A stretch of 64,000 nucleotides of DNA. It comes from Octopus sinensis. Taxonomy: Eukaryota. Position numbers and translations under genes: made by a program. Of the stretch, positions 9,601 through 48,392 are shown in pieces; the stretch's first letter is position 1; the number at the start of each line of letters is the position of its first letter. Location of the stretch: positions 96,224,001 through 96,288,000 of the forward strand of contig NC_042999.1 of the NCBI RefSeq assembly GCF_006345805.1, written 5' to 3'. The notes beneath the pieces are model-generated. The model did no database searches. It was not told where the DNA came from and was given only the letters and a program-made list of their open reading frames with translations.

Positions 9601-10878
9601 TTTCATCAGCATCATCTTCCTGCTATGGTCCATTATCATCGTCATTGTTTAAAGTCCTTCCATGCTTGCATGGTTTGAATAGTTTGACAGGAGCTGGCCA
9701 GGTGGAAGCCTGCACCATGCCTCTGTGTCTGTTTTGACATGGTTTTCATGGCTGGATGCCTTTCCTAACACCAACCACTCCATAGAGTGGGCTGAGTGCT
9801 TTTTAAGTGGCGAACATTTTATTGCTGGATGCCCTTCCAAATGCCAACCACTATATTGTGTGGACTGGGTGCTATTTAAGTGGCACCTGCACTGGTGGGG
9901 TCACTAAGTGACTTTGCAACACAAAGAGTCTTTGAGATGAGAGGGGGGGGGCATTGTGTCAGATGATGAAAAATTCAAGTGTAACAGAGAAGTAGAAACA
10001 GATATCATGCTGTAGAGGAGGTCTATGGCTACCCAGACAGAGAGAGGGAGAGAGAGAAGAGAAAGAGAGCAAGAATTAAAAAGAATGAGGGCAGAAACAG
10101 TTACCTGAAGAGAGAGAGAGAGAGAGAGAGAGAGGGAATTAACAAGAAAGAGTTGTATTGCTGTAAAGGAGATACATGGTTACCTAGCCAGTGGTAAGAG
10201 CAAGGGAAGGAGGGAGTGAAAATGATCTAGAATGACAGAAATGGGTTTATTGCTGTAGGGGAGATACATGATTACTCAGCCAGAGGAGACAGCAAGGGAA
10301 ATGGAGAGAGAGTAGGAGACAGTAAGAGCAGGAGAGGGAAGGTGGGAAGTGCCATGGTATACTTGCAAGGAACAAGAGATCAGGGCATAGATGGGATGGT
10401 AGAGTTAGGAAGAGGGAGATGAATGGTGACAAGTGCTGGCAGGATGTTGCCAAGGAGTTGGAAGTGGGGGGGTGAAGGAATGTGGTGACTAGTGAGAATC
10501 TGGGTAGAAAGGGAGGGGACGGGAGAGGCAACAATACAGTTAGCAGGGTAGTGTGGATGGATTGGGGAGTGAGGAATGCTGTGACTGGTGAGAATCTGGA
10601 AATGTGAGCAGGGTAGCAAGGACTGGATTGGAGAGTGGGAGATAATCATAGTGTATGAAGAGAAACAGTTTGGGAAGGGGATATAGTTTGGTTTGTTGGG
10701 GTAGGGTGTGTGAAAGTTTTATTGTAATGTGTGGGTGGGCACAATACTTCTAGAACTAACTCAGGTTTGCTGACCTGGGGATGGGGATGTAGTTTGGTCT
10801 GTTGGGGTAGGGTGTGTGAAAGTTTTATTGTTGCATGTGGGTGGGACACAATACTTCTAGAATTCAGGTTTGCTGATA
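9601..10878 (-). mobile_element. 5'-truncated RTE LINE, 3' UTR only
   Basis: CAT-rich tail, 'gctggatgccttcctaacaccaacc' motif twice, purine-rich body, tandem ~106-bp unit at 10681-10876; colinear with the next copy. Confidence 0.75.
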
Positions 10879-10907
10879 TGTATGTGTGTGTGTATATATA
10901 TATATAA

Positions 10908-12560
10908 AATCATCATCATCATCATCATTGTTTAACATCCACTTTCTGTGCTGGCATGGGTGGGACACATTGACAGGAGCCAGCCAAGTAGAAGCTAGAA
11001 GCCTGCACCAGACTTCTGTGATTGTTTTGGCAGGATTTTTAAAAATAGATGCCCTCCCTAATACCAGTCACCCAGTAGAGTGGACTTAGTGCTTTTTATG
11101 TGGCACAAGCACAGACAAGGTTCATTTTGGAAAGGTTTTTACAGCTGGATGCTCTTCCAAATGCCAACCACTCAACAGTGTGGACTTTTTAATTTGCACC
11201 TGTTTTTTAATTTGCACCTGCACTGACAGGATCACCAAGTAACTTGCAAAACAAAAATCTTTTGAGAGGGGAGGGGGCACTGGAGGAGGTGATCTTGTAT
11301 CAGATGATGAAAGGTTATATTGAGACAGAGAGACAGAAACAGGCATCTTGCTGTAGAGGAGGTATGAGGTTACTCTGCCCAAGAGAGAGAGAGAGAGAGC
11401 TGGGTCAGGAATGAGGACAGAAACAGGTATGCTGCTGCAAAGGAGATACAGAACCTGAAAGAAGTTCAGGAGGAGAGAGTGTGGGAGACATCAGGATAGA
11501 AATGGTGGCAAAGTGCTGGGTATACTCACATGGGACAAGGATCAGAATATAAATGGGATGATCAAGTAAAGGCAGAGAGGGATATAGATGGTGGCAAGTG
11601 CCAGGGCATACCCTTGAGGTTCGAAGGTCATAATATAAGTGGCAGGATAGAGCCAAAGAAGTGTGATTAGAAAGTAGGGAATGGAAGTGAGTGATGAAAA
11701 CCTGGGTATATAGAATGTGCAGTGGGGAGCACTGGAGAGCAATGATACAGAGAAACAGGGCTGTGAGGACAAGATGACAGGATTGGGGAGTGAGAGGTAG
11801 GCATAGGGCAAGGAGGAGGAAATGTGTGGAAGCGAAAAGATATAGATTGGTTTGTTGGAGTAGGGTAAGTGAAAAGTTTTCTTGTTACATGTGGGTGGAA
11901 CACAAGTTGGGGGCTGGCAGATAGCAATGATACAGATGTAGTTTGGTTTGTTGAAGTACAGTGTGTAAGAACTTTTCTTATGTGTGGGTGGGACTCACTG
12001 CTTCTAGAACTCAGTTTCACTGACTTAGGCAGGTCTCCTCAATCTTATATCGCCAGATATCTCATTCCATTGCCATTTCCTCTGTGAGACCCAACACCCT
12101 AAGATCTGTCCTTACCATTCATCCCATGTTTTCCTGGGTCTCCCTCTTCCACAGGTACCATCCACTTTCAGTGATCAGGACTTCTTTATGCAATTGTCCT
12201 TATTCATACGCATCACATGTCCAAACCAATGTAGTCTTCTCTCTTGTATGTTACATTTGATTCTTCTTACACCCAACTTTTCTCTCAATACATTTGCACT
12301 TTGTTGTACATGCACACTGATGATGCACATTCAATGGAGTATACTGCCTTAATTTCTCTCCAGTCTGCACATGTCTTCTCCATTCAAAGCCCATGTCTCA
12401 CTACCATGGAGTATAGCTGTTTACGCACAAGCAACATACAGTCTACCTTTCACTCTGAAAGAGAGTCCTTTTATTGCCATCAAAGTTAAATAGCTCTCTG
12501 AAACTTCTTCCACCCTATTTTTATTCTAGAAACAATACTTTCAGAGCATCCTCCACCATT
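10908..12560 (-). mobile_element. 5'-truncated RTE LINE with ORF2 C-terminus and ~1.15-kb 3' UTR
   Basis: Minus strand reads GGGCSESIVSRIKIGWKKF, QERRLHWFGHVMRMNKDNCIK and a GRGRPRKTW-like end (frameshifted); (CAT)n tail at 10908-10928. Confidence 0.85.
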
Positions 12561-23710: not shown

Positions 23711-24505
23711 ATCATCATCATTCTCATTTAAGTCCACTTTCCATGCTGGCATGAGTTGGATGGGTTGACTGGGGGTTGGCAAGCCAGAAGGCTGTACCAG
23801 GCTCCAGTCCAATCTGGCAAAGTTTCTACAGCTGGATGCCCTTCCTAATACCAACCACTCCAAGAGTGTAGTGAGTGCTTTTTACATTCCACTGGCACAA
23901 GTGCCAGTCAGGTGGTACAGGCATCGACCACGCTTGAATGGTACTTTTTACATGCCACCAGCACAGAACCCAGTCAGGTAGCACTGGCAATAACCACGCT
24001 TGAATGGTGCTTATTATGTGCCACCAGCATGGAACCAGTCAACCGGCACTGGTATCGACCATGCTTGAATGTGCCACTGGCATGGGTGCCAATCAGGTGG
24101 TACTGTCATCGGCCATAACAATGATTTCACTTGCCTCAACAGATCTTTGCAAGTGCAGTTTATTGCCCAATGATTGAAAGGTACTCTTAAATGGGCTGGT
24201 TATGGTGCACTGGCATAGGCCATGGTTAAGGACTCACTTGGTTTGGTGGGTCTTCTCAAGCACAGCATATCTCCAAGGGTCTCAGTCATTGCCTCGGTGA
24301 GGCCCAATGTTCAAAGGTTGTGATTCACCACCTCATCCCAGGTCTTCCTGGGTCTACCTCTTCCACAGGTTTCCACTACTGCTAGGGTGTGACACTTTTT
24401 CACACAGCTGTCCTCAACCATACACAACACATGACCATACCAGCACAGTTGCCTCTCTTGCACACCATATCTGATGCTTCTTGAGTGCAACTTTTCTCTC
24501 AGAGT
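23711..24505 (-). mobile_element. 5'-truncated RTE LINE with ~600-bp 3' UTR containing 4 tandem ~64-bp units
   Basis: ORF end STLREKL...VQERQLCWYGHVLCM...CGRGRPRKTWDEVV (24311-24505); (CAT)n tail at 23711. Confidence 0.87.
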
Positions 24506-25534: not shown

Positions 25535-25765
25535 ATCATTATCATCATCATTTAACGTCCGCTTTCCATGCTAGCATGGGTTGGACGATTTTGACTGAGG
25601 GCTGGCTAACCAGACAGCCGCACCAGGCTCTAATCTTGATCTGGCAGAGTTTCTACAGCTAGATGCCCTTCCTATTGCCAACCACTCCAAGAGTGTAGTG
25701 GGTGATTTTTACGTGCCACCGGCACAGGGCCAGTCAGGCGGTACTGGCAATGACCTCGCTCGAAT
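25535..25765 (-). mobile_element. Short, young RTE 3' end
   Basis: (CAT)n-tttaacgtccgctttccatgctagcatgggttggacg, nearly identical to 27053; one gtgccaccggcac unit. Confidence 0.85.
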
Positions 25766-27052: not shown

Positions 27053-27455
27053 TCATCAGCATCATCATCATTTAGCGTCCGCTTTCCATGCTAGCATGGG
27101 TTGGACGGTTCAACTGGGGTCTGTGAAGCCAGAAGGCTGCATCAGGCCCAGTCTGATCTGGCAGTGTTTCTACAGCTGGATGCCCTTCCTAACGCCAACC
27201 ACTCCATGAGTGTAGTGGGTGCTTTTTACGTGCCACTCGCACCGGTGCCAGACAGAGCTGGCAAACGGCCACGGACGGATGGTGCTTTTTACGTGCCACC
27301 GGCACGGGGGCCAAGCGAGGCTGGCAACGGCCACGAATGGATGGTGTTTTTTACGTGCCACTGGCACGGAGGCCAGTCAGGGCGGCGCTGGCAATGGCCA
27401 CGATCGGATGGTTCGCTTACTTGTCACCGGCACTGGTATCACAGCTGCAATTTCT
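27053..27455 (-). mobile_element. Young CpG-rich RTE 3' end with ~3.5 tandem 62-67-bp units
   Basis: (CAT)n tail; units start at ~27218, 27281, 27343, 27410; the two central units carry gtgccacYggcac, the outer ones are degenerate. Confidence 0.85.
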
Positions 27456-31224: not shown

Positions 31225-31482
31225 GGTTGATTCCTGGGGATGAAATTTTAATCATCAATGGAAAGATAGTCTCAGAGCTTGATATGGTATTCATTGAAGC
31301 CTTGCTTCATGAATCCCATTCTTTATGTATGACGGTTCAAACCTGTCGTGTTCAGGTTCCAACTGTGGTCAATGCAGGAGGGCCGTCAGCAGATACCAAT
31401 GACAGCATTATCCAAAATACCATTGGCACTCCTCCACAGCCTAGAGACAAAGCCTTAGCTGATTTGTCTGTAGGCTCTCCAG
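31225..31482 (+). CDS. sif: sif/TIAM exon: C-half of PDZ (GLIPGDEILIINGKIVSELDMVFIEALL) and linker
   Basis: Acceptor taatttgcag|, donor CCAG|gtaata; 258 nt, phase 1-1; GDEILxING PDZ signature. Confidence 0.92.
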
Positions 31483-32662
31483 GTAATATGTTTTCCATTA
31501 CATATTTCATTTTCTTTCTGGATATGTTTTCATTTGTATATTAATGTTGCTTTCTATTCATTTCACTCTTATCCTGAAGCTGCTCCTTACAGAAACAGGT
31601 GATTCAATATGTTACTTTCTATGGTGCATATTTAAAAGCTAATAATTGAACAATATAATAACACTGTTAGAGGATGAAAAGTGTTGCTACTGTAGATTAG
31701 GCTGTTTATACATTAAGCGTAAGATTCAGCAGAGCATGAAAAATAGAGGTAGAAGCTGAAAAACATTATTTAAACTAAAGTCAGAATGAGTAAAAGACGA
31801 CATGGTCAGATGAAGTGTGAATAATATGCATTTGATAAACTAATACATAAATTACAAATCACAAAAATATGTAAAATTATGAAATATTCAAATAATATAT
31901 GGAAAAAGGATTTATTATTATTAACATACCCAAGCAGAATTCCTAGAGTTAAAGGAATAACCAACTAGACATTCCACCTGCAAGAAATAGTAGTCAAGTC
32001 CCTTTTGAATTCCATCCTGTCTTATAGCATAGATATGCTGTTCCCAAAGAAAGTACAGTACAGTCATGGTTGGAACAGCTTTAATTATTTGTTTACTATG
32101 TCACATGAATAGATATGTACTTGATAGTCACAACTGACTTCAACAAAAACAATTGCAAAGTGATTCTAGATATCTCAGGTTTTCAGTATTTCAAGGTTTT
32201 TACTCTACCTTAATATTAAGGAGTTATTGTTGAATATATTTGGTTTCAAAACTTCTTGTTTGTCATGATAAACACAATAGTTCACCTGTTTTCAGTTTTC
32301 TCTCATTCACTATTTTATCTGTGAGTTGTATCAGCTTTAAGCCAGGTGGTTATTAAACAGGTAAATTCAGTCAAACAAAAAGACAAGACTAAGTAATGTG
32401 ATACATTAGTGTACTCATTCATGTGAACCAACTAAGAATATTATTGACATTTGAAGAAAACAATTGACTTTCATAATAATAGCTTGTTTCATGTAACAGT
32501 TACTACTAGACATCTGACATGAAATGTCAAGTTTTATCGAGCAAGGTGAGAAATATCATTGGACAAAAATGGATACAATTTTTGTTCTCTTCATAATATG
32601 CACCTTAACAAATAGTCAAAATATATTTCACTCCAGCTCTTCTTTTATTTCTGTTATCATAG

Positions 32663-36596: not shown

Positions 36597-37140
36597 TCTC
36601 ATCATCATCATCATCATCATCATCATTTAATGCTCATCTTCTATGCATGCATTGGTAGAACAGTTAACATGAGCTGGACAAGTAGATGACTACTCCAGAC
36701 TACTGAGTCTGTTTTGGCAAGATTTTTATGGCTGGATGCCTTTCCTAATACTGACCACTCTGCACAGTAGACTCAGTGCTTTTTATATGGCACTATCACA
36801 GGCAAGATTAGTTTTGGCATCATTTTTACAGCTGGATGCCCTTCCAAATGCCAACCACTTTACAGTGTGGATTGGATGCTTTTTACATGGCACCAGCCCT
36901 GACAGAGTCATCAAGTAACTTGCAGGACAAGGAATTTTGAGAAGGGCAGGAACATTTGAGGATGGAACTTGTGCCAGAAGATGAAAGGTTAGAGTGTGAT
37001 AGAGAGACAGAAATAGGTATCTTGCTATAACAGTGATCTGGTGTCAGATGATGAATGGTTAAAGCATGACAGAGAAATAGAAAGGCAGAAACAAGTGTCT
37101 TGCTATAGAGGAGGTATATGGTTACCCAGCAAGAAAGAGA
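36597..37140 (-). mobile_element. RTE 3' UTR fragment (long-UTR type)
   Basis: (CAT)n tail, duplicated gctggatgcc..ccaaccact motif; colinear with 9601 and 10908. Confidence 0.75.
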
Positions 37141-37531: not shown

Positions 37532-37726
37532 GACCTCAATGTGTTGATTGAGCGATATTTAAATCCTCTGAAGGCAGAGACACTCTTGACATCGGATGAG
37601 ATAATGCAGTTGTTTGGTAATATCCAGGAGATTGTTCAATTTCAGGAACAATTTCTGCAAAGTTTAGAAGAAGCCATAGAGCTAGGGGGTGACTTCTTCA
37701 CCCTTGATGACCCAAAGAAATTTCGG
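37532..37726 (+). CDS. sif: sif/TIAM exon: DH domain (DLNVLIERYLNPLK...LFGNIQEIVQFQEQFLQSLEE...PKKFR)
   Basis: Acceptor tctgtacag|, donor CGG|gtaagt; 195 nt, phase 0-0; LFGNIxEI DH motif. Confidence 0.94.
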
Positions 37727-40700
37727 GTAAGTGAACCTTAAAACTAAAACCAAATGTGTTGTCATTTTCAGTAATGTTTTTGTTTGGTTTTCAAAAATAC
37801 ATTATTGTTTATTGCAACCAAGAACAGCAATTTATTAAACTTACCTTTCAGAATTATTGTTTCTGCAGTACACCATTTGCTTTTTGCTACCATTTATCTT
37901 TCAGCCTAATAACATTTTTCAACAATTCATCAGTCTGCTAGTAATATGTGAGATACAATAGCCAACATGGGCATTTACTGTTGAACTTAACTAAAAATTA
38001 CACAATATTATGAAATTAATTTTTTTTTTTAGTGGGATGTTGTTTAGACAAATTAACCCTCTAAAATTTGATAGCTCACACAAACATTATCATGCTTCAA
38101 AAAATACTCATTAAATACATTGGGATTTAAGGATCATTGGTATCAACAATATAATGAATATTCTTTATTTTATACTTTATCATAAGTAGGTTTATGTTTC
38201 CTTTCTAAATTTTAGCATTAGATCTTATGAGCCTGTCGTTTTTTTTTGTTCCTCATATTTGATAGCTTTTTCAAGGTTAAATTTTAGTATATCCAGACCA
38301 GTGTTTCTCTTTTATTCTGAGAAAAAATAGGGATGGAACCATAACTTTATGCTTAATAGAAAAGGAAAACAGATTCATTAACTATTTCCTATCAGAGTAT
38401 CATATCACTAATCTATTTTGTATATAAAAGATGTATTTAAAAAAGGGTACAAAACCATACTATCTATTATTCATCATTGACTGAAAAATATTTTAAAGAA
38501 ATTAAACATTTACTATCGGTCTTAAAAAGAAAGGTAATTTAATTGGAGACAATATGGAATTGTCTGCCTTAAAACATTTTATCTACATGAACTCCAGCTA
38601 TGCCTACTAAATTGTTGCTATTTGTTTTACTCCAAAACTTATATTAGTCATGGAGTATTTTTATGATGACTTATACTATCTAAAAAGTGCTGAGAGATCT
38701 CTGTATGATTTCATATTTGTATAGTAATTCTTTGTGTAAAATAAGGAGTCGCTTCTACTCTGCCTATACACCAATACTTCTATATCTTATGACAAAGACA
38801 CAGTACAAAACTGTGGGAGCAAGGAACTATTTACTTCAACACTACTATGTATATATAATACGATTAAATTTTGAATCTTTCAAAATGCTGCATTGCAAAA
38901 GACTATTGTAAATAATAACAAGATGTCTTTCTCTTAATCTGTCAAGTAGGAAATGATTGGTTAGTATTTAAATGAAAATTGCTTTCATTTTTCATTTCAC
39001 TATTTTCTTTCATTTCTTACCAATTCCTTAAAATCTTCACAAAAATGGATGCATGATATTGTTTGAAAAAAATATTTGTTTTCATTCATTTTAATATTGT
39101 AATATAAAAGAAAGTCCACTCCTCCAGCTTACTGGCTGCTTTATAAATAAAATGTGTGAAAAGACTTTATAGGTTGTTGCAGGATTCTCTTTCACTAGCT
39201 GTGAATAATTCAACAATGAGTAAAAGTTAATTATTGTTTAAGAACAAAGTGTTTTCTCATTATTACCTCCACACTTTCTAGATCCATATACAGCTAAAAA
39301 CCTGCAGAGTTATTCAAGTATTGCTGACATTTGCCACAGTTCACCACACACATACAGAACTGGAGAGAGCAATATTATTTCAGTAAAATACACTACACAG
39401 CATACTCAGAATGACAATAAATGTTAGCCTTTGAGCAGTGAAATCAGTGAGGCATAGCTACCTCTACCTCATGCTGTCCACTGTTGTAATGAACTACTAT
39501 TTGCCATTGGTATAAGCTATTTAAATAAATAATTAATTCTGGGATAGTCATTTTTATGAGGTTCCATATTTTTATGAATTTGTATATATGCTATGGACTA
39601 ATTAAACTATCATCTTTATTATTGCCATCATCTCAATTTTGAAGAGTTTAGAATAGTATTAACATTTGGTTTATAGCAAAGTACAGTAGACTCATATTTT
39701 CAAAACTATACAAAATATATAATAAAATATTTTTCAAAATATATAGCAATTAGAGTGAAATGGTTAAAATTAGTTTATTGTGCAAATTTGTGTTTTTAAA
39801 ATATCTCATATGATTTCTGTACCAGATTGGATTCTCACTGAAAAGATCTTTTGAAATATGAACAGTTCACCTATCACATAGGAAAGTTCTAACTGAACAA
39901 TTCGCTAATATTAAGTTTTGCCCATGTTGACTTAATGAAATGAAAGATAAAGCCATTTTCACTTTTACTCATTTGCTTTTTATTTATATTCTGGGTTGAT
40001 TTTGTCTGCATTTCCCCTCATTCTTAATTTTACCTCATTGATCAAATTGTTTTTATTTTCGAAAAGATAAAACTGTTTTACATTGTTCATTCATTATTTT
40101 CTTTCTGCTGTGTGTTTGTCCTACTAGGATGAAGAACTCAGGGTATGTACTAACATTATTAACTGTTGCATAAAAACAGTGACATTCGCATGGATTTTAC
40201 TCTTTGTTTATCATTTTATTCTTTACCTCACTTATTAACCTCATGTGAAACCCATCGTTGACAGTTTATTTTTCTCTGCTTGTTTGCGGCTACATTTTAA
40301 GAACTGTCTTTCTAGCAATGTACTGCGCTGAGATTGTTTTTACTGCTGTGACTACTGTTGTGGCTGCCATGTTTAGTGTACTTTTAACATATAACATCAA
40401 CAATTAGAGCATTTCTTACTTGAAGTTTCATCTATATTAAGTACTTATAAAGAAATACTACCTTTTATCTCCTCTCACTTCTCTGGCTGTACTTTTCTTA
40501 TATAAAATAGATTTCTTTCATTCAAAATGCTTTGTATTCATTAGAAATATGTTTGTGTGTCTTTTTTTTTTACTTTAAAAAGTAATAGAATAGTTGTCTC
40601 TTTTTTTTCTTCATTTCATCATTGTGATGTCTAAGCATTTTTGATTTAGTTTTTTTTTTTTTCTAATAAGAATAACTTTAAGATTTTGCCATTAAAGTAA

Positions 40701-43419
40701 GTTTTTATTTATAATTTTTGCCAAATTAATGCTAAATGTTTAATATTTATAGGTGCCCTGTTTATTCAATACTTAATCTAGTGACTTCTTGTTTAAAAGT
40801 TACTGAAATTATTATCAGAAGATAAAGTTGCTTTTATACTGACCTCTTAAGGAATACACATTTTTATTTAGATATATTTCAAATACAATTTAATGTTCAA
40901 TACAATTATTGTCAAGATTTAGCCCCAATAACATAGATTTAACAAGGTGTTAATCAGAAGAATTAGATTCAGTATTCCTCTGATATAATATTAAAAATCA
41001 TATGCATCTTCAGTAGTAGTGACTAGGGTTCTTATTTTTTTATGATTTTTTTGAAATCATAATAAATTTACATTATTAGCTATTAAACTGATAAGAAAAA
41101 TAACTTTTACATTGAAAAATGTCATTATGAATAGCTGATTTCTGCTGGAAATGTTTGCTATATGCTAATATGTTATAGTATCAAACTACTAAATTTCTAA
41201 CAAATGTAGATAATAATTTGACAAGCATGAAAGTTTGATAGAATTTACATTTAGTAAATTTCAGCTTTATTACTCCATAAAAATTAAACTTTTCTTTAAA
41301 TGTTGTCTTTTAGTTAATTCATATTTAACATGGCAAAATTTATCTGCAAAGATTGACATTAACTAAAATGTAGGTGCTACTACACAACTATTTGGTTATT
41401 AAAAATATTAATGTTGTATAAGATACATAGGTTATTTTTTCTTTCATCATTTCATTTAATATCATACATATTCTTTATAAGATTATTAAGATGTGTCATT
41501 ACATTGTCTAATGCAGTATTTAGAATTTAAGAGGACTGTGAAAAGGCTATACATAATTTCCATTAAAATTTTTTTAGAAAACTCAATCTACAAAATCTGT
41601 ATAAAAACTCTAATCTACTAACAAGCTAACAATTAGAAACTATCGAGCAGTTCTTAGTATAAGCATAGAAAAAAGTTGTATAAATTATTGGTTAGAAAAT
41701 GTTGGTATTAGATTGTTACCTGAAGCTGTTTCAGACAGTCACTAAAGAAATCATTTTAAAATCTTTATCATCATCATTCATAATTGGTATGATTATTATT
41801 TCAGAGAATTAAGTAAATCAAATAATAGAATCCTTACATTTATATTATGTATAGCTGAGTGCTAACATAGAACTGTACCTTGGACATGAAATTTAACTAC
41901 CTAGCAAAATGGATATAAGACCAAAATATGTCCATTGCTTTCCCTAGTTGGCTTCAATGACTAGATTCACTCCAATTTATCCTATATTGTTCAAAACGTT
42001 TGATCAATTGATATTATTGGAGTTATTTCCCATGCAATCGTTTTAGATTTTAAATTCACTTTAAAGGAGTTTTAATCTCAGTTTTTCGACCCACTATATT
42101 GGTTCTTGAGTATGTTACAGTTAAAATCTTAGAAGTCCTTTATTTGGATTTTATGTAGAATGTATTCAATTCAATAATTTTAGTTAGAATGTACTCATTT
42201 AATTCACTTTCACTTAAAGAAATGCATTGTTGCCACAATATCCCACTTCACCTATCATATCATTATAATTATCTCTATCATTATTCATATCATGATTTAC
42301 TTCTGATTTTCAATCTTCACTAGTGTCATTTGCTGAATTTTTATAGCTAAAATCATTTTCTAAAGAGGTTTCAGATAACTCTTACCTTCATATAATAGTT
42401 AAGTACATATTCAGCTACAGGTAACCACTACAGATTTCATTAAAAAATTAAGTTTCAAGGTAATATGCTTTATTAAGGGACCAAATACAATTTTACTGAT
42501 AATGAAAATATGAAACCATTAATGTTAGCAAAATATTCTTCAAAATAAAGTTTGGTTTGCATTTAATCCTTATCTCAGTTATGATGATAAAATTCAGACT
42601 GATATAAACAAACTAAATCATCATGTATCCTCTTCTCTCCAAATCTGCATCACCTTATTTAAAGTGCAATATGTTTAAAATATGACCTCCTTTCATATTT
42701 AAATATGTGCTACTCTCCAAAAATCATTTATGTGTTATGAAAAAAAAAATTATTTTGATGTTGAATCATAAGACCAGCTCAATGGATTCCAAATATAAAT
42801 ACTTACACACACATATACAAACAGTGAAAATCCTTCATATAATTTAAGTATTCTAGAGATCAGGAAATGTACAAAGTTAAATTTATCTTGATAGAATCAA
42901 AATCCAAAACAAGTGACTCCCAAGCTTAAGTCAGCAAACCTATCTTAATTCTAAACTATATGTAAAAACTAACATATGTCTGTAAATATAAATCATAGGT
43001 ATAATGTTAGAAAGTTGATTTAAAAGTAATGTCTATAATAATAGTGCTTAAGCATTATTGACAACCAAAAGATTCTTTGAGTGTTAAAGATTAGTCATAT
43101 TCTCTCTTTGCAATGACTGTTTATGAATTTTTAAAAGAAATTAGGTAAATATGATTTTAGAAGTTCAGATATTTAATAGATTTACTTCAGTTTAGCAGCT
43201 AGACTCTGGTTCAGCATTTAATCATAATTGATATATTTAAAAAAGAAGCTAACACTAAATTTGAAGCAACTTTTAATGGTTAACTGGATGTCTATAACAT
43301 TATTATTATGAATACATAGTGTTATAGTCTATCCTTGCTATACTGAAATAATTCTGTCTTCAGTATTTGAGTCTTATAATCTGTTTCGAAGTATCATTAA
43401 TTCTTTTTTCATTAGGTTT

Positions 43420-43745
43420 CATCACCATCCTCATTTAATATTTGTTTTCCGTGTTGGCATGTGTTGGATGGTTTGAGAGGAGCTGGCAAAGCTGGAAGCC
43501 ATACCAGGTTTCATTGCCAATTTTGGCATGGTTTCTACAGCTGGATACCCTTCTTAATGCCAACCACTTAACCAGTGCTTCTTATGTGGCACCAGTACCT
43601 TGCAAGATAAAAACCTCTCAACTGGGAGGGAAGTAGTAGAATTGAGGGTGTATGGCTTTGAGCCAATTGAGAGATTTAAGGTATAGAAGGGACTGATATA
43701 AATGTCTTGTAGAGCAGATACATGGATTCCCCAGTTGGAAAACAA
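43420..43745 (-). mobile_element. RTE 3' UTR fragment
   Basis: catcaccatcctcatttaat...ctacagctggatacccttcttaatgccaaccac; same family as 36597. Confidence 0.7.
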
Positions 43746-44034
43746 AGCAAAGTGAGTTAGATAGTCAGAAAGCCAGGGTATGTAGTATGTGCTTAATGAA
43801 CTATAGATACCCTTTGAAACTCATTTAGTTGTCCTTTTGTTAAAGATGAACTCTAACTTTTATCTTATGAAAATCTTAACCCTTGGATTACACAACCATT
43901 GTTCTGACAATATACCGAAATAAGAAGTTGGATGAATACATACATATATATAAACACATCATCATAAAAAAATTTCAATCATCATCAGAAATAAGAAATA
44001 TGAAATGATACAAGATAACTATCTCATTCATTCA

Positions 44035-44395
44035 TTCTTTTATCACCATTTAAAATCCATTTTTGCATGGTTTAGACAAAATTTCTTGAAACAGATTTTT
44101 CTACAGCTGGATGACCTTCCTGTCACCACCCCTCACCAGTTCAGACTGGAATGAACACTCCCATTAGTATGACAATGGGGCTCATTTACAACTATCACAC
44201 GGTATCTAGTCATAGGTACAAGCAAAACACACACGCACATATATATGACAGGCTTCTTTCAGTTTCTGATTACCAAATCAGCTCTCAAGGCTTTGGTCAG
44301 AATGGGGCTATAATAGAAAACACTTGCCTAAAGTGCAATACAGTGGTACTGAACCTAAGATCACATGGTCGAGAAGCAAGCCTAAATCACATCCA
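44035..44395 (-). mobile_element. SINE with family-A head and tail C
   Basis: 44230-44395 is the reverse complement of the family-A head; 44035-44220 is the tail-C module. Confidence 0.7.
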
Positions 44396-44564
44396 TATTT
44401 AATTCAATGAAAAAAAAAAAGAAAAGAACTTATCATCATTGTACTAAATATGAATATGCTAAACAAATCAGTAATCAAATATCTAGCCTTTCATTGTGAG
44501 AATAATTTCTAAACATATGTTATTTTATCCTTTATATCAAAGGTAATGTTAGTTTTGTATAAAA

Positions 44565-44780
44565 TTGGTTTCAAATTTTGGCACAAGGCCAGTAATTTCG
44601 GGGTAGGAGTAAGCCAAGCATATCAACCTCAGTGCTCAACTGGAACCTATTTAATCAACCTTGAAGGGATGAAAGGGAAAGCTGACCTCTGCAGAATTTG
44701 AGCTCAGAATGTAAATACAGATGAAATACTGCTAATCATTTTGCCCAGCATGCTGATGATTCTGCCAGCTCACCACCTTA
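44565..44780 (-). mobile_element. Family-B tRNA-derived SINE
   Basis: Full-length match to 21367-21560. Confidence 0.8.
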
Positions 44781-47700
44781 GTTTTGCAAAATTTTACAAA
44801 ATATTTTTTATTGAGTTGCAAATAAAAGGCAATAAAATACAGAAAATTTTGATTGTTAGTATTTCTACAGACTGTATTTTAATGTTTTCTCTTACCTCTT
44901 CACAAAGAAAATAACAAAGATACTTTACTTCAAATTTATGAAGATAAATTTAATAATATTGACTCATTAGATACACATATAAAATGTTAAATAGAATGTA
45001 GTACTGGCAAGGGTAGAACAATGATTTTCCAATACTTTTGTAAAATCATGTTCTTCTATTAGATTGTTTAATTTCTTGAATGTGGCATTGCATATTCTTG
45101 TGACTATATGCATGTATACACAAATGCTTATTTAGCTCTAAAATCAACTATCTAAAATCCATTATACAAACATGCACTTACAGACAATAACATATAATCT
45201 CTTCAGCAGAATAGCATTTTTAAAGGAACTAAGCGTTTTTATCAGCATTTTCCATCTTAAGAAAATTGGTGGGAAGTTGTCTATTGAGTTAACAAGTAAG
45301 GTTAAAAACTATTTTAACAGAGAAACTCGAATGTAAGAACATAGGACTTAAATTCTGCAATACAGTACCCCTAGATTTGTAAAGCAACAAAGAATTCATT
45401 GTTTCCAGACAAAGTGTAAAACCGGAAGAAAAGTTCTAAGTATGTATATTTATACACACCAGTGGAAATGGGCTTTAGGAACTAATGGTATGCCTGAGAG
45501 GTTAAATGTGGGAATGTGGGTGTTAGATGCTCTATGAACTTATGAACTGGTAATCACTGTTCACAAATGTATACACCACTGTATATCTTCACAACACTTT
45601 AAGTATATATATCTGGACATTTTTGTCTCAACAAATAAGAAATATCTTTAGAGTAATTAAGTTTGTCTTTTTCTTTTAGTTTTTTTTTTTTTTTTGTGGT
45701 TGTTTTCATGTTCTTCTACCTCCCCATTGCCATCAATAATGATTCTGCCTTTCTTTTTGCACACAGCACCATTTTACTCACTGGGCTTCATAATTTAGGT
45801 TATACAAGTCACATGCTTCGCAAAAGTTCACTTTACACTCAAACCTTTGTTAAATCAAGATTCACTTTTCCAAAAAGTGTTTTTCACCTATTTTTCACCT
45901 CCACACTTAAGATGAAAGATCAATCTTCTAAATTTAATTCATTTATCATTATCATTATACTCATTATTGTCTTGTATTGAAATAGTTGATAAAATGCATT
46001 ATCTATTCTTATTATAATTGTATATCTAATACTCTCTAATACTTTGAATTTAGAGGGAAATTTCCCCTCATTTATGATAATTGCAATGCTGCTCTTTGAG
46101 GAGGCTTTGAATTCTGTATAAGATTTACAGTAGTGACATTTGTTCAATATTGCAAAGAAATACATTTAACTCCATTGTACTAATTTAGGCTATACAAAAA
46201 AAAAAAACATAAATGCATGACTAAACATACTATCTGGTGATATTTCAAACTTGGTAGCAACTAGAATATGCTTGCAATTCTTTGTTGAAAATATAGAAAT
46301 AAGCTTCTAAAAAGTTTTATGTTAAATTAGCTAGTAATACTGACAAATATGAAATTTTCATTGAAATGTCCCTATATATTATAATTGTGTGTGTATATAT
46401 ATGCACTACATGTATGTGTGTCTGTCAGTGTGTATGTATGTACAATTAGTTCATGCAACAGTGTCTATGTTTGAGATACTCTCTGTTCAAAATGCATATA
46501 ATTTGAAACTATCTTAAGATAATTTCAACAAAATACATTGTAAATAAGTAATTTTATTTAGTAATTTTTATGTTATTGTCTGTTAAATTGAAAATGATAT
46601 GGAATAAACTGAAGTAAAATAATCCAAGATTGCAAATATAAAGAACAATTGTTAAGTTTAACTTATTTCTAAATTTCCTGAACATTGTAACTTACTATAT
46701 TTTTTTCACAATCTGATAAGGCCTATATGTGTTATGTAGTGTGTCTATGACACACTCTTAAATTTAAGTTCATTAAATTTCACTAAAATGTTGAAGACAT
46801 ATTTGAAAAAAAAATGAAAACCATTTAAAATGCTTTTAATTTATTGATTAATGCTTAAATAGCATTCTAGGAAAGCTGAAGAGAGATATTGAATAGGTCT
46901 TTATGGTCAGTCAAATATTTGGACAGGAACAATTTGATTAACTATTGAAAATGTACATCAGTACTAAAGTGACTCATTAAATTTGATGGTGGAGGGAAGT
47001 CCATCCTTATTTACCGACTTACCAACAGACTAATTACCTCAAACATCTAAAGTAAAAGTTGTTCAGAAAAATATTGTCTATTGATATTCAATATTGCTGA
47101 AATAATTTGTATTTATAAAGGACAGTATCAAAAAGGAAATTTTAAACATTTCTTTCTCATAGCTATCAGATATTCAGATATTTCATGGCTCAGTCCTTCT
47201 TTCTCTTGTTGTCTTGCTAACTGTTATTCTTGTAGTTTCAAAACAACATACTGAAAAGAGGAATATAGTTAGTAAAAGAACATCCTCTTGATTAATTAAC
47301 TTCTATTTGAAACATGAGACATTTCTGTCCTTGGCTCTAAGAATTCAAAACTTGCCTTTGATATTTTTTCACATCATAGGATAATTTTTGAAAGGTTGTC
47401 AATTTGCAGTTAGTCAATTGTGTCACTGGAAAAATGAAGGCAATGCAACAAAAGCTATTTGATTAGCAGAAAAGAACTGATGTCAAAGTTTTCATTAATC
47501 ATGATCTATTATCGCTCTGTTAAAATCTTAGGATTGTTTACACTTTAGCTAACTTTTAAAAGCTTTAGAAGAGATAAGTCTTTACGACCCATTACTCATG
47601 TTATGCCTTGAAAGAGAAGAAATTTCAATTCTCATTTCTTTTGAATGTTGGTCAATTGATAGATTTATCATCATCATCATCATAATTTTTATCATCATTT

Positions 47701-48283
47701 TAGTCACCACGCTGGAATGGTTTGAATAAGTTTTCTGAGATAGTATTCAATGATTGGAAATCTTTCCTGTCGCCAACCATTTTAGTTGCTTCTTACAACA
47801 ATAGGACCCACGTGTCTTTTCTAAAACTATGGTATACATAGTAAGTTACTTAATAAACTATATAACATTTTCACTTAAAAGTGTAACCCATAGAATGTAT
47901 CTGCCTTGATGTCAAAGTGTCTATAAGTTGTGTACTGAGTGAACATTTTCATTTGATTTCCTCTGTCATTATCCCTATCACCAGTTGTTATTTTAATTGA
48001 ATATACATTTTTTCTATGAGTCATTAAAATATTATCTGTGTTATTAACAGGAACAATATTTATGCACCATTTTGTACACAAAATCACACTTGCACAATCT
48101 AAATAAGTAATTACACACAAACATTACTTTACAAAAAACATATATGTATGTTATTCATGTATACATCTGTATCGTGTAGGTTGTTTGTCATCTCATGTAT
48201 ATAAAACATAGCCAACCAAAGGCCTGAATAATTAGAAAGAACAAAGAAATTTTCAAATATATTGCTTTTGTTTTCTATTACAG

Positions 48284-48392
48284 CGTGTTCTGTTTTCTCT
48301 GGGTGGCTCTTTTCTGTATTATGCCAACCATTTCAAGGTGTACAGTTCCTTCTGTGCTAGTCATTCAAGGTCGCAAAAGATCCTCAACCCAG
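48284..48392 (+). CDS. sif: sif/TIAM exon: DH domain ([36 protein letters not shown])
   Basis: Not in the ORF track; translated by hand. Acceptor ttttctattacag|, donor CCAG|gtaagt; 109 nt, phase 0-1. Confidence 0.93.

What the first reader, a model, noticed from the sequence alone, without database searches (positions are those of the whole stretch)
40128..40142. Candidate 15-nt microexon (DEELR) inside the DH catalytic domain
Seen: pyrimidine tract ttattttctttcTGCtgtgtgtttgtcctactag|GAT GAA GAA CTC AGG|GTATGT, with TACTAAC at 40148-40154. The exon is purine-rich in a T-rich context, 3n and stop-free, and both neighbours are phase 0, giving PKKFR-DEELR-RVLFSLG. Established: upstream UGC marks eMIC/SRRM-dependent neural microexons; downstream ACUAAY is the STAR/QKI (How) motif, which generally promotes inclusion; GEFs are common microexon targets. 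Inference: a tissue-specific 5-aa acidic insertion that could tune Rac GEF activity. I do not recall it from Sif or TIAM1.
Basis: partly seen in the sequence, partly recalled or inferred. Interest (0 to 1): 0.76.

Follow-up and report, generated by a model that had tools for sequence, protein, structure and literature searches.

The report
Conserved 15-nt microexon in Tiam/Sif GEF
The 15-base segment is a genuine protein-coding microexon, kept in the same intron of the Tiam/Sif Rac-activator gene in at least eight invertebrate genomes, that adds five mostly acidic residues to a helix of the catalytic domain; when it is included and what it changes are still untested.

Summary
GATGAAGAACTCAGG sits at 40128-40142, between ...ctactag| and |gtatgtactaac. 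It lies in the 10.6-kb phase-0 intron between two RhoGEF (DH) exons of a Tiam/Sif-like gene.

From this window alone it is not convincing. A crude splice-site score predicts about 0.3 equally good decoys per intron of this size.

Comparison with other genomes settles it. Seven more orthologous introns were examined: two oysters and five unnamed protostome contigs. Each holds exactly one AG|15 nt|GT segment encoding [D/E]-x-[D/E]-L-R. The expected number is at most 0.001 per shuffled intron. Third codon positions drift at the intron rate, while first and second positions are kept.

An oyster protein model (UniProt A0A8W8JLZ7) reads ...[15 protein letters not shown]. The pearl-oyster model skips the exon even though its genome carries it, and gastropod models also lack the insert.

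AlphaFold models place the insert as a five-residue extension of the CR2 helix.

Still untested:
- Alternative use, which is likely.
- Neural or eMIC control. The UGC motif is upstream in 5 of 8 genomes (P = 0.08).
- QKI control. The ACUAAC motif occurs in this window only.
- Any effect on GEF activity.

This is a new member of a known kind.

The parts
40128..40142 (+). 15-nt coding microexon GAT GAA GAA CTC AGG (DEELR), phase 0 on both sides
   Evidence: Sequence read. Orthologous 15-nt exons encoding [DE]x[DE]LR lie in the same intron of seven other genomes. The pattern is unique in 350 kb of sequence counted on both strands, with at most 0.001 expected per shuffled intron. Identity by codon position is 0.72, 0.85 and 0.35, against 0.27 in the flanking intron.
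40093..40127 (+). 3' splice region: pyrimidine-rich tract, UGC at 40106-40108 within UGCUGUGUG, and acceptor AG at 40126-40127. The nearest upstream AG is 61 nt away.
   Evidence: The crude acceptor score is 3.8, against 6.3 for exon C. UGC occurs within 30 nt upstream in 5 of 8 species, P = 0.08.
40143..40148 (+). 5' splice site GTATGT
   Evidence: Across the eight species the donor is GT[AG]NGT, with +5 G and +6 T invariant. The crude score is 3.3.
40149..40163 (+). ACUAAC-N5-UAAC, a bipartite STAR/QKI-type motif beginning 6 nt after the donor. It is seen only in this window, not in the other seven genomes.
   Evidence: The local chance of such a motif within 30 nt is about 0.005. No ACUAAY occurs within 150 nt downstream in the other seven species.
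40188..40192 (+). GCAUG (Rbfox-type core) 46 nt downstream of the microexon. A weak lead only.
   Evidence: GCAUG occurs within 300 nt downstream in 3 of the 7 loci tabulated in that call (window, L010, L012). L014 was not examined for it.
37532..37726 (+). Upstream constitutive DH exon B (DLNVLIERYL...DDPKKFR), donor CGG|gtaagt, phase 0
   Evidence: Best named matches are 77% identical: Pinctada and Gigantopelta Tiam/Sif proteins.
48284..48392 (+). Downstream constitutive DH exon C ([36 protein letters not shown]), which encodes the CR2 helix
   Evidence: Aligned to Tiam1 1FOE.
37727..48283 (+). Host intron of 10,557 nt, split by the microexon into 2,401-nt and 8,141-nt introns
   Evidence: The 900 nt around the microexon are single-copy within the window. 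No unusual RNA fold was found (z = +0.78).

Best explanation
Positions 40128-40142 are a genuine coding microexon of a mollusc (probably cephalopod) Tiam/Sif-type Rac GEF gene, and it is evolutionarily old.

What is shown:
- The same intron holds one 15-nt, phase-0 exon encoding [D/E]-x-[D/E]-L-R with AG and GT[AG]NGT splice sites in every orthologue examined whose intron reached far enough, apart from L004 (see the Against line).
- Selection acts on the peptide, not on the surrounding intron.
- At least one oyster protein model includes it.

What is inferred:
- It is a cassette exon that is sometimes skipped. The skipped form has the same length as vertebrate and arthropod proteins and is what several mollusc gene models show. 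The microexon's 3' splice site scores lower than the downstream constitutive one in all 7 species where both could be scored.
- Inclusion needs a dedicated activator acting on the 3' splice region. The Srrm234 eMIC pathway is the leading candidate, at roughly 40%. In this lineage a STAR/QKI-type site just after the donor may add a second input.

At the protein level, the exon junction lies about five residues into the CR2 helix of the DH domain. Inclusion lengthens that helix by five residues (about 1.4 turns) and adds two or three negative charges. It keeps a hydrophobic residue plus Arg immediately before R-[V/I]-L-F, because L-R replaces F-R.

The most likely consequence is a change to a surface at one end of the DH helical bundle. 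That could affect intramolecular inhibition or a binding partner, rather than the Rac1 contact residues themselves.
For: Sequence and phases.

Orthologous microexons:
- L001 EKDLR
- L006 DEDLR, inside an intron of only 213 nt
- Magallana gigas-type contig L007 DLELR
- Pinctada imbricata L010 DLELR
- L011 DDDLR and L012 DADLR
- L014 EGDLR

Statistics: the motif is unique in 350 kb (both strands counted), with at most 0.001 expected per shuffled intron. Third codon positions are 0.35 identical, against 0.72 and 0.85 for positions 1 and 2 and 0.26-0.28 for the flanking intron.

Protein level: UniRef100_A0A8W8JLZ7 from M. gigas reads [19 protein letters not shown], and those five residues match the genomic 15-mer in L007.

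Skipped forms are annotated in Pinctada, Gigantopelta and Nucella, although the Pinctada genome carries the exon.

The microexon acceptor scores lower than the exon C acceptor in 7 of 7 species.

Structure: the skipped form matches Tiam1 1FOE without a gap, and the included form needs a 5-residue gap. AlphaFold gives a 20-residue helix (532-551, pLDDT about 95) in the skipped Pinctada protein, with the junction at 536|537. It gives a 25-residue helix (363-387, pLDDT 74-88) in the oyster inclusion form.

Background from papers: eMIC-dependent exons have UGC near the 3' splice site and long AG-exclusion zones (PMC8797185). The Tiam1 N-terminus binds the DH-PH region intramolecularly (PMC4850038).
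Against: - No RNA evidence exists for the window's own species. No spliced transcript of this gene from any mollusc turned up in the protein collections or in the metagenome scans.
- The only inclusion evidence is one partial oyster model whose C-terminus goes off-track after exon C.
- Alternative versus constitutive use is therefore inferred, not observed.
- UGC enrichment is not significant.
- The QKI-type motif is not conserved.
- The oyster AlphaFold model has a truncated DH domain.
- One compact orthologue (L004, 215-nt intron) lacks the exon, as do the short introns of arthropods and fishes.
- L005 offered only 470 nt of the intron, with no candidate, so it is uninformative.
- The taxa of L001, L006, L011, L012 and L014 are unknown, so a divergent paralogue in molluscs cannot be fully excluded.
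Confidence: 0.8

Rival explanations
1. It is a constitutive exon. The 15-nt exon would always be spliced in for these lineages, and gene models without it would simply reflect annotation pipelines and aligners missing very short exons.
For: The Pinctada model skips an exon that its genome clearly carries, which shows that annotation is unreliable for it. The exon is under peptide-level selection. Its donor site is decent in all species.
Against: The skipped form is co-linear with vertebrate, echinoderm and arthropod proteins. RefSeq models of Gigantopelta (three isoforms) all lack it. The acceptor is consistently weaker than the downstream one, and very weak in L006 and L010. Exons this short are rarely recognised without a dedicated activator; this last point is established knowledge, not tested here.
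Confidence: 0.12
2. It is a chance pseudo-exon. A long AT-rich intron would happen to contain a good AG...GT pair in frame.
For: From the window alone, about 0.3 such candidates are expected per intron of this size. The non-coding strand has as many.
Against: The same 15-nt coding pattern recurs once, and only once, in seven other orthologous introns. At most 0.001 is expected per intron, and the pattern of change is codon-like.
Confidence: 0.02
3. It is a conserved intronic splicing element that never reaches the mature mRNA. One form would be a recursive-splicing stepping stone, in which a zero-length or transient exon helps remove a long intron.
For: Juxtaposed strong AG and GT in a 10.6-kb intron. 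No transcript evidence for this species.
Against: The exon is present in a 213-nt intron, where no stepping stone is needed. Conservation follows codon positions and a fixed 15-nt length rather than the splice signals alone. The oyster protein model contains the five residues.
Confidence: 0.03
4. Its regulation is not neural or eMIC-based. In this cephalopod-like lineage, inclusion would be driven mainly by a STAR-family protein (QKI/How) bound to ACUAAC-N5-UAAC just after the donor, for example in muscle or glia.
For: A full bipartite motif lies 6 nt downstream of the donor, with local chance about 0.005. None occurs near the other donors of this gene in the window.
Against: The motif is absent in the other seven species, so it is not the ancestral control. 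There are no expression data. The motif sits unusually close to the 5' splice site and could instead interfere with U1 binding; this is my inference.
Confidence: 0.15

Closest known systems
Srrm234/SRRM4 eMIC-dependent neural microexons (Irimia 2014; Torres-Mendez 2019, 2022, PMC8797185)
   Same: Length of 3-27 nt. Frame-preserving. Sits inside a folded domain of a signalling protein. Peptide-level conservation with unconserved flanks. UGC close to a weak 3' splice site, with a long AG-free stretch in the window.
   Different: Neural inclusion and eMIC dependence are untested. UGC is present in only 5 of 8 species (P = 0.08). The published fly and mammal programmes share almost no exons. This exon is not in fly or vertebrate orthologues, yet it is shared by molluscs and a second protostome group.
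Intersectin-1 microexon 20 (PMC3645719)
   Same: A neuron-specific microexon in a Rho-GEF scaffold that adds five residues and shifts negative charge within a folded domain. It changes partner binding rather than catalysis.
   Different: The ITSN1 exon lies in the n-Src loop of SH3A, not in the DH domain, and is a vertebrate exon. Here the insert extends a helix of the catalytic DH domain.
TIAM1 DH-PH domain bound to Rac1 (PDB 1FOE)
   Same: The flanking exons align over 215 residues at E = 3e-78. The skipped form matches Tiam1 residue for residue at the junction (DQFK|KVLF against KKFR|RVLF).
   Different: Tiam1 has no counterpart of the five residues. No vertebrate, echinoderm or arthropod sequence retrieved carries an insert there.
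Drosophila still life (sif) alternative splicing
   Same: It is the orthologous gene family, known to be alternatively spliced in neurons. sif shows cycling alternative splicing in clock neurons (PMC6025963).
   Different: No event at this junction was found. The arthropod orthologues retrieved here with a read-through (retained) intron have a short intron there and no microexon. Drosophila itself was not checked.

Membership tests
Tiam/Sif family Rac GEF (host gene) | PDZ domain, then a DH (RhoGEF) domain, then a Tiam-type second PH domain, with close similarity to Tiam1 DH-PH | tested here: met
   Pfam RhoGEF at 1.6e-46 and PH_Tiam1 at 3e-17 on the spliced exons. 1FOE at E = 3e-78. A PDZ-like exon at 31225-31481. 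The best named relatives are Tiam/still-life proteins of molluscs.
Coding microexon (3-27 nt) | Length of 27 nt or less, canonical AG/GT splice sites, reading frame preserved and free of stop codons | tested here: met
   15 nt, AG|...|GTATGT, phase 0 on both sides.
Coding microexon (3-27 nt) | Conserved as an exon in orthologues, with selection on the peptide | tested here: met
   Eight genomes, one hit each, at most 0.001 expected per intron. Third codon positions are neutral.
Coding microexon (3-27 nt) | Present in mature mRNA | tested here: inconclusive
   Included in one partial oyster protein model, A0A8W8JLZ7. No transcript data for the window's species. Scans for spliced junctions in metagenome contigs found nothing usable.
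Alternative (cassette) exon | Both inclusion and skipping isoforms exist | tested here: inconclusive
   Inclusion is annotated in Magallana. Skipping is annotated in Pinctada, Gigantopelta and Nucella. These are different species and annotation pipelines, so both forms have not been shown in one organism.
eMIC/SRRM-dependent neural microexon | UGC motif close upstream of a weak 3' splice site, with a long AG-exclusion zone | tested here: inconclusive
   The window has UGC at -22 and an AG-free stretch of 61 nt. UGC occurs in 5 of 8 species, P = 0.08 against intronic AG sites. The acceptor is weaker than its neighbour in 7 of 7 species.
eMIC/SRRM-dependent neural microexon | Neuron-restricted inclusion that depends on the eMIC domain of Srrm234 | not testable with these tools
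   No tissue RNA-seq or perturbation data were reachable.
STAR/QKI (How)-regulated exon | ACUAAY core with a UAAY half-site in the downstream intron | tested here: met
   ACUAAC at 40149-40154, then 5 nt, then UAAC at 40160-40163. The local chance is about 0.005.
STAR/QKI (How)-regulated exon | Motif conserved with the exon | tested here: not met
   No ACUAAY occurs within 150 nt downstream in the seven other species. Close cephalopod relatives could not be examined.

The most novel reading that the evidence does not exclude
The exon would be an ancient neuron-specific switch, predating the split of molluscs from a second spiralian phylum. It would be controlled by the eMIC domain of Srrm234, and it would re-tune autoinhibition or partner binding of the Tiam/Sif Rac GEF at synapses by extending the CR2 helix with an acidic turn. 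That would make it one of very few protostome microexons conserved across phyla, and a handle on how microexons act inside a catalytic domain.
Probability: 0.3. Interest if true: 0.65.

Novelty: new member of a known kind. Interest (0 to 1): 0.5.

Why it matters
Published comparisons report that microexon programmes have been almost completely rewired between flies and mammals, and that they turn over quickly within insects (PMC8797185). A 15-nt exon kept with the same length, phase and peptide motif in bivalves, a probable cephalopod and a second protostome group is therefore a useful, clean marker. It could help in studying microexon regulation in spiralians, which include the large cephalopod nervous systems.

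It also sits inside the catalytic DH domain of a synaptic Rac activator. This gives a simple with-or-without-five-residues experiment on GEF regulation.

In practice, the exon is missing from several mollusc gene models (shown directly for Pinctada), so those annotations of this gene are incomplete.

Tried and rejected
1. Word-indexed protein searches with the spliced window sequence, with a four-species junction alignment and with the oyster junction. They returned only single-exon genomic ORFs and fragments. No spliced mollusc transcript of either form appeared, so they say nothing about inclusion.

Exon B alone and database proteins were used instead.

3. A metagenome scan for a back-translated FR-[DE]x[DE]LR-R[VI]LFS junction gave 0 hits. 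The control scan for the skipped junction gave only chance or genomic hits. One of those, L014, turned out to be an eighth genomic orthologue. The negative result is therefore uninformative.

4. Look-ups of the Gigantopelta and Nucella genes failed, so I could not check whether their genomes carry the exon.

5. L005 offers only 470 nt of the intron, with no candidate, so it is uninformative.

6. An RNA fold of the exon with its flanks showed no unusual structure. A self-BLAST showed it is not part of a repeat.

7. Literature searches for a Tiam/Sif or DH-domain microexon found nothing specific. Searches for the assembly accessions of the unnamed loci also found nothing, so the taxa of L001, L006, L011, L012 and L014 remain unknown.

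8. The splice-site scores use approximate consensus frequencies that I wrote from memory. They serve only for ranking within this analysis.
Full report
**What is at the coordinates**

The window reads ...ttattttctttctgctgtgtgtttgtcctactag|GATGAAGAACTCAGG|gtatgtactaacattattaac..., with the 15-mer at 40128-40142. It lies in a 10,557-nt intron between two exons on the + strand.
- Exon B is 37532-37726 (DLNVLIERYL...DDPKKFR). It ends CGG|gtaagt in phase 0.
- Exon C is 48284-48392 ([36 protein letters not shown]). It starts acag|CGT in phase 0.

Together with neighbouring exons these give a Pfam RhoGEF domain followed by a Tiam-type PH domain. They align to the Tiam1 DH-PH crystal structure 1FOE at E = 3e-78.

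**Is it more than chance within the window?**

Only weakly. I scored donors and acceptors with an approximate consensus matrix and calibrated it on the gene's real exons. The candidate scores 3.8 for the acceptor and 3.3 for the donor, which is inside the range of the real sites. It is the only AG..GT pair of 3-51 nt of that quality in this intron. However, each strand of the 64-kb window, including the non-coding minus strand, holds two in-frame stop-free candidates at least as good. That predicts about 0.3 per intron of this size. The window alone cannot decide the matter.

**Orthologous introns decide it**

The same phase-0 intron position exists throughout the family. I fetched genomic DNA for every orthologue that the tools could reach. 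Each intron that extended far enough contains one 15-nt AG|...|GT segment encoding [D/E]-x-[D/E]-L-R.

| Locus | Source | Exon sequence | Peptide | Donor |
|---|---|---|---|---|
| window | this window | GATGAAGAACTCAGG | DEELR | gtatgt |
| L007 | Magallana gigas-type Logan contig | GACCTGGAACTGAGG | DLELR | gtatgt |
| L010 | Pinctada imbricata, GCA_033119305.1 | GACCTGGAGCTCAGG | DLELR | gtacgt |
| L001 | GCA_013332975.1 | GAAAAGGATTTGAGG | EKDLR | gtatgt |
| L006 | Logan SRR30767268, intron of only 213 nt | GATGAAGACCTTAGA | DEDLR | gtgagt |
| L011 | ENA ERZ26222911 | GATGACGACTTGCGG | DDDLR | gtacgt |
| L012 | ENA ERZ26696836 | GATGCTGATTTGAGG | DADLR | gtatgt |
| L014 | JAAUYG010215820.1 | GAGGGGGACCTCAGG | EGDLR | gtaagt |

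The pattern AG-[DE]x[DE]LR-GT occurs exactly once in each of these sequences, always in this intron and on the coding strand. It occurs nowhere else in 350 kb counted on both strands. Shuffled introns give at most 0.001 matches each.

Pairwise identity among the eight is 0.72 and 0.85 at first and second codon positions. It is 0.35 at third positions, close to the 0.26-0.28 of the flanking intron. Donor positions +5 G and +6 T are invariant. This is the signature of a translated exon, not of a conserved non-coding element.

**Protein-level evidence**

An exhaustive search with exon B returned a Magallana gigas protein, UniRef100_A0A8W8JLZ7. It reads ...[22 protein letters not shown].... Those five residues are exactly what the oyster genomic 15-mer encodes.

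The model is partial, and its C-terminus goes off-track after exon C, so it is supportive rather than conclusive.

Other models go straight from FR/FK to R[VI]LF. These are Pinctada KAK3097345.1, three RefSeq isoforms of Gigantopelta aegis, and Nucella KAL8579618.1. The Pinctada genome nevertheless carries the exon.

No vertebrate, sea-urchin or arthropod sequence retrieved has an insert there. Fish and arthropod introns short enough to be read through contain no such exon. One compact unnamed orthologue (L004, 215-nt intron) also lacks it.

**How widely is it spread?**

Over the DH-PH exons the window's protein is 79-81% identical to gastropod and bivalve proteins. L001, L006 and L012 are 76-80% identical to each other but only about 70% to the molluscs, and 60-68% to arthropod-like representatives. 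L011 and L014 join that group on exon-level similarity only: about 80% to L001 in exon B, with tblastn matches. Their GC content (0.41-0.49) also differs from the mollusc loci (0.31-0.36).

The exon is therefore shared by molluscs and a second protostome group whose name I could not establish. A divergent mollusc paralogue is not formally excluded.

An interspersed repeat in the window matches, without mismatch, a motif I recall from octopus genomes. This is a lead from memory, not a test.

**Regulation**

Features that fit a regulated cassette:
- The microexon acceptor scores lower than the exon C acceptor in all seven species with both sites, and is very poor in L006 and L010.
- The window has a 61-nt AG-free stretch and a UGC at -22, inside UGCUGUGUG. 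Similar GCUGUG strings lie upstream in L001, L011 and L014.
- These features match the published cis-code of eMIC-dependent exons (PMC8797185).

Features that stay open:
- UGC within 30 nt upstream is present in 5 of 8 species, which is not significant against intronic background (P = 0.08).
The local chance is about 0.005, and no other donor of the gene has one.
- None of the other seven species has ACUAAY within 150 nt. At best it is a lineage-specific addition.

Tissue specificity could not be tested at all.

**Effect on the protein**

The skipped form is co-linear with Tiam1. The included form needs a five-residue gap in Tiam1 just before VLFSLGG.

AlphaFold2 on the skipped Pinctada protein gives a confident 20-residue helix, SKAFR|[15 protein letters not shown] (532-551, pLDDT about 95). 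The exon junction lies five residues into it. On the oyster inclusion form the corresponding helix is 25 residues, [25 protein letters not shown] (363-387, pLDDT 74-88). The DH domain of that model is truncated. Its fold matches 1FOE.

In all eight species exon B ends in F-R and the microexon ends in L-R. Both isoforms therefore present a hydrophobic residue plus Arg before R-[V/I]-L-F. The net change is an extra, mostly acidic helical turn and a half at the N-terminal end of the CR2 helix.

From my recollection of the 1FOE work, Rac1 contacts CR1, CR3 and the DH-PH junction rather than this end of CR2. I did not verify this here.

I therefore consider a change in an intramolecular or partner surface more likely than a direct change in catalysis. 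The Tiam1 N-terminus is known to bind the DH-PH region (PMC4850038). This step is inference.

**Comparison with known cases, and novelty**

The exon works like the neural microexons described by Irimia, Blencowe and colleagues. It most closely resembles intersectin-1 microexon 20, a neuron-specific microexon that adds five residues and shifts negative charge in a folded domain, changing partner binding (PMC3645719).

Membership in the eMIC-dependent class is not established. The cis features are inconclusive and the defining expression and dependence tests were not possible.

I found no paper describing a microexon in the DH domain of Tiam/Sif. One database model already contains it.

I rate it a new member of a known kind. 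It is real, old and neatly conserved, with function and regulation still to be shown.

Noticed in passing
window 9751-9778, 9824-9851, 11144-11171, 23831-23858, 25658-25685, 27175-27202, 36831-36858, 43540-43567: There are eight copies, all on the + strand, of an interspersed repeat containing GCTGGATGCCCTTCCTAACGCCAACCAC. The copy at 27175 matches exactly, and none is expected by chance.
   Followed up: partly
window 10001-12000: A block with GC 0.45 and GC skew +0.48 sits in an otherwise roughly 30% GC region. It contains (AG)13 at 10109-10134 and a 106-nt tandem duplication at 10672-10876.
   Followed up: no
window 31593-31598: This is the only other + strand candidate that beats the microexon on both crude splice scores. 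It is a 6-nt AAACAG flanked by AG and GT, about 110 nt downstream of the PDZ exon donor. It could be another microexon or a decoy.
   Followed up: no
P0180/P0179 (Gigantopelta, 1455 vs 1450 aa); P0181/P0182 (S. purpuratus, 1717 vs 1712 aa): Annotated isoforms of the orthologous gene differ by exactly five residues in a gastropod and in a sea urchin. The difference is not at the exon B/C junction, so the gene may carry other 15-nt alternative segments elsewhere.
   Followed up: partly
L004 6516-6730 (ENA ERZ26859052): This is a compact orthologue whose B-C intron is only 215 nt and has no counterpart of the microexon. L006, with a 213-nt intron, keeps it. Loss or absence is therefore not simply a matter of intron size.
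   Followed up: partly
L005 3168-3431 (ENA ERZ23487774, closest to Solemya): Exons A and B are fused here, with no intron between ...ERAYVK and DLNC.... This contrasts with the window, Pinctada and the L001 group, so an intron was lost or gained within the family.
   Followed up: no
P0046 residues 414-453: The oyster protein model that includes the microexon goes off-track after exon C. Its sequence there matches neither the next exon nor a simple intron read-through. It probably derives from an incomplete or aberrant transcript model.
   Followed up: no
window 40188-40192; L010 and L012 downstream introns: GCAUG (the Rbfox-type core) lies 46 nt downstream of the microexon in the window and within 60 nt in L010 and L012. 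The other four loci tabulated have none within 300 nt. L014 was not examined.
   Followed up: partly
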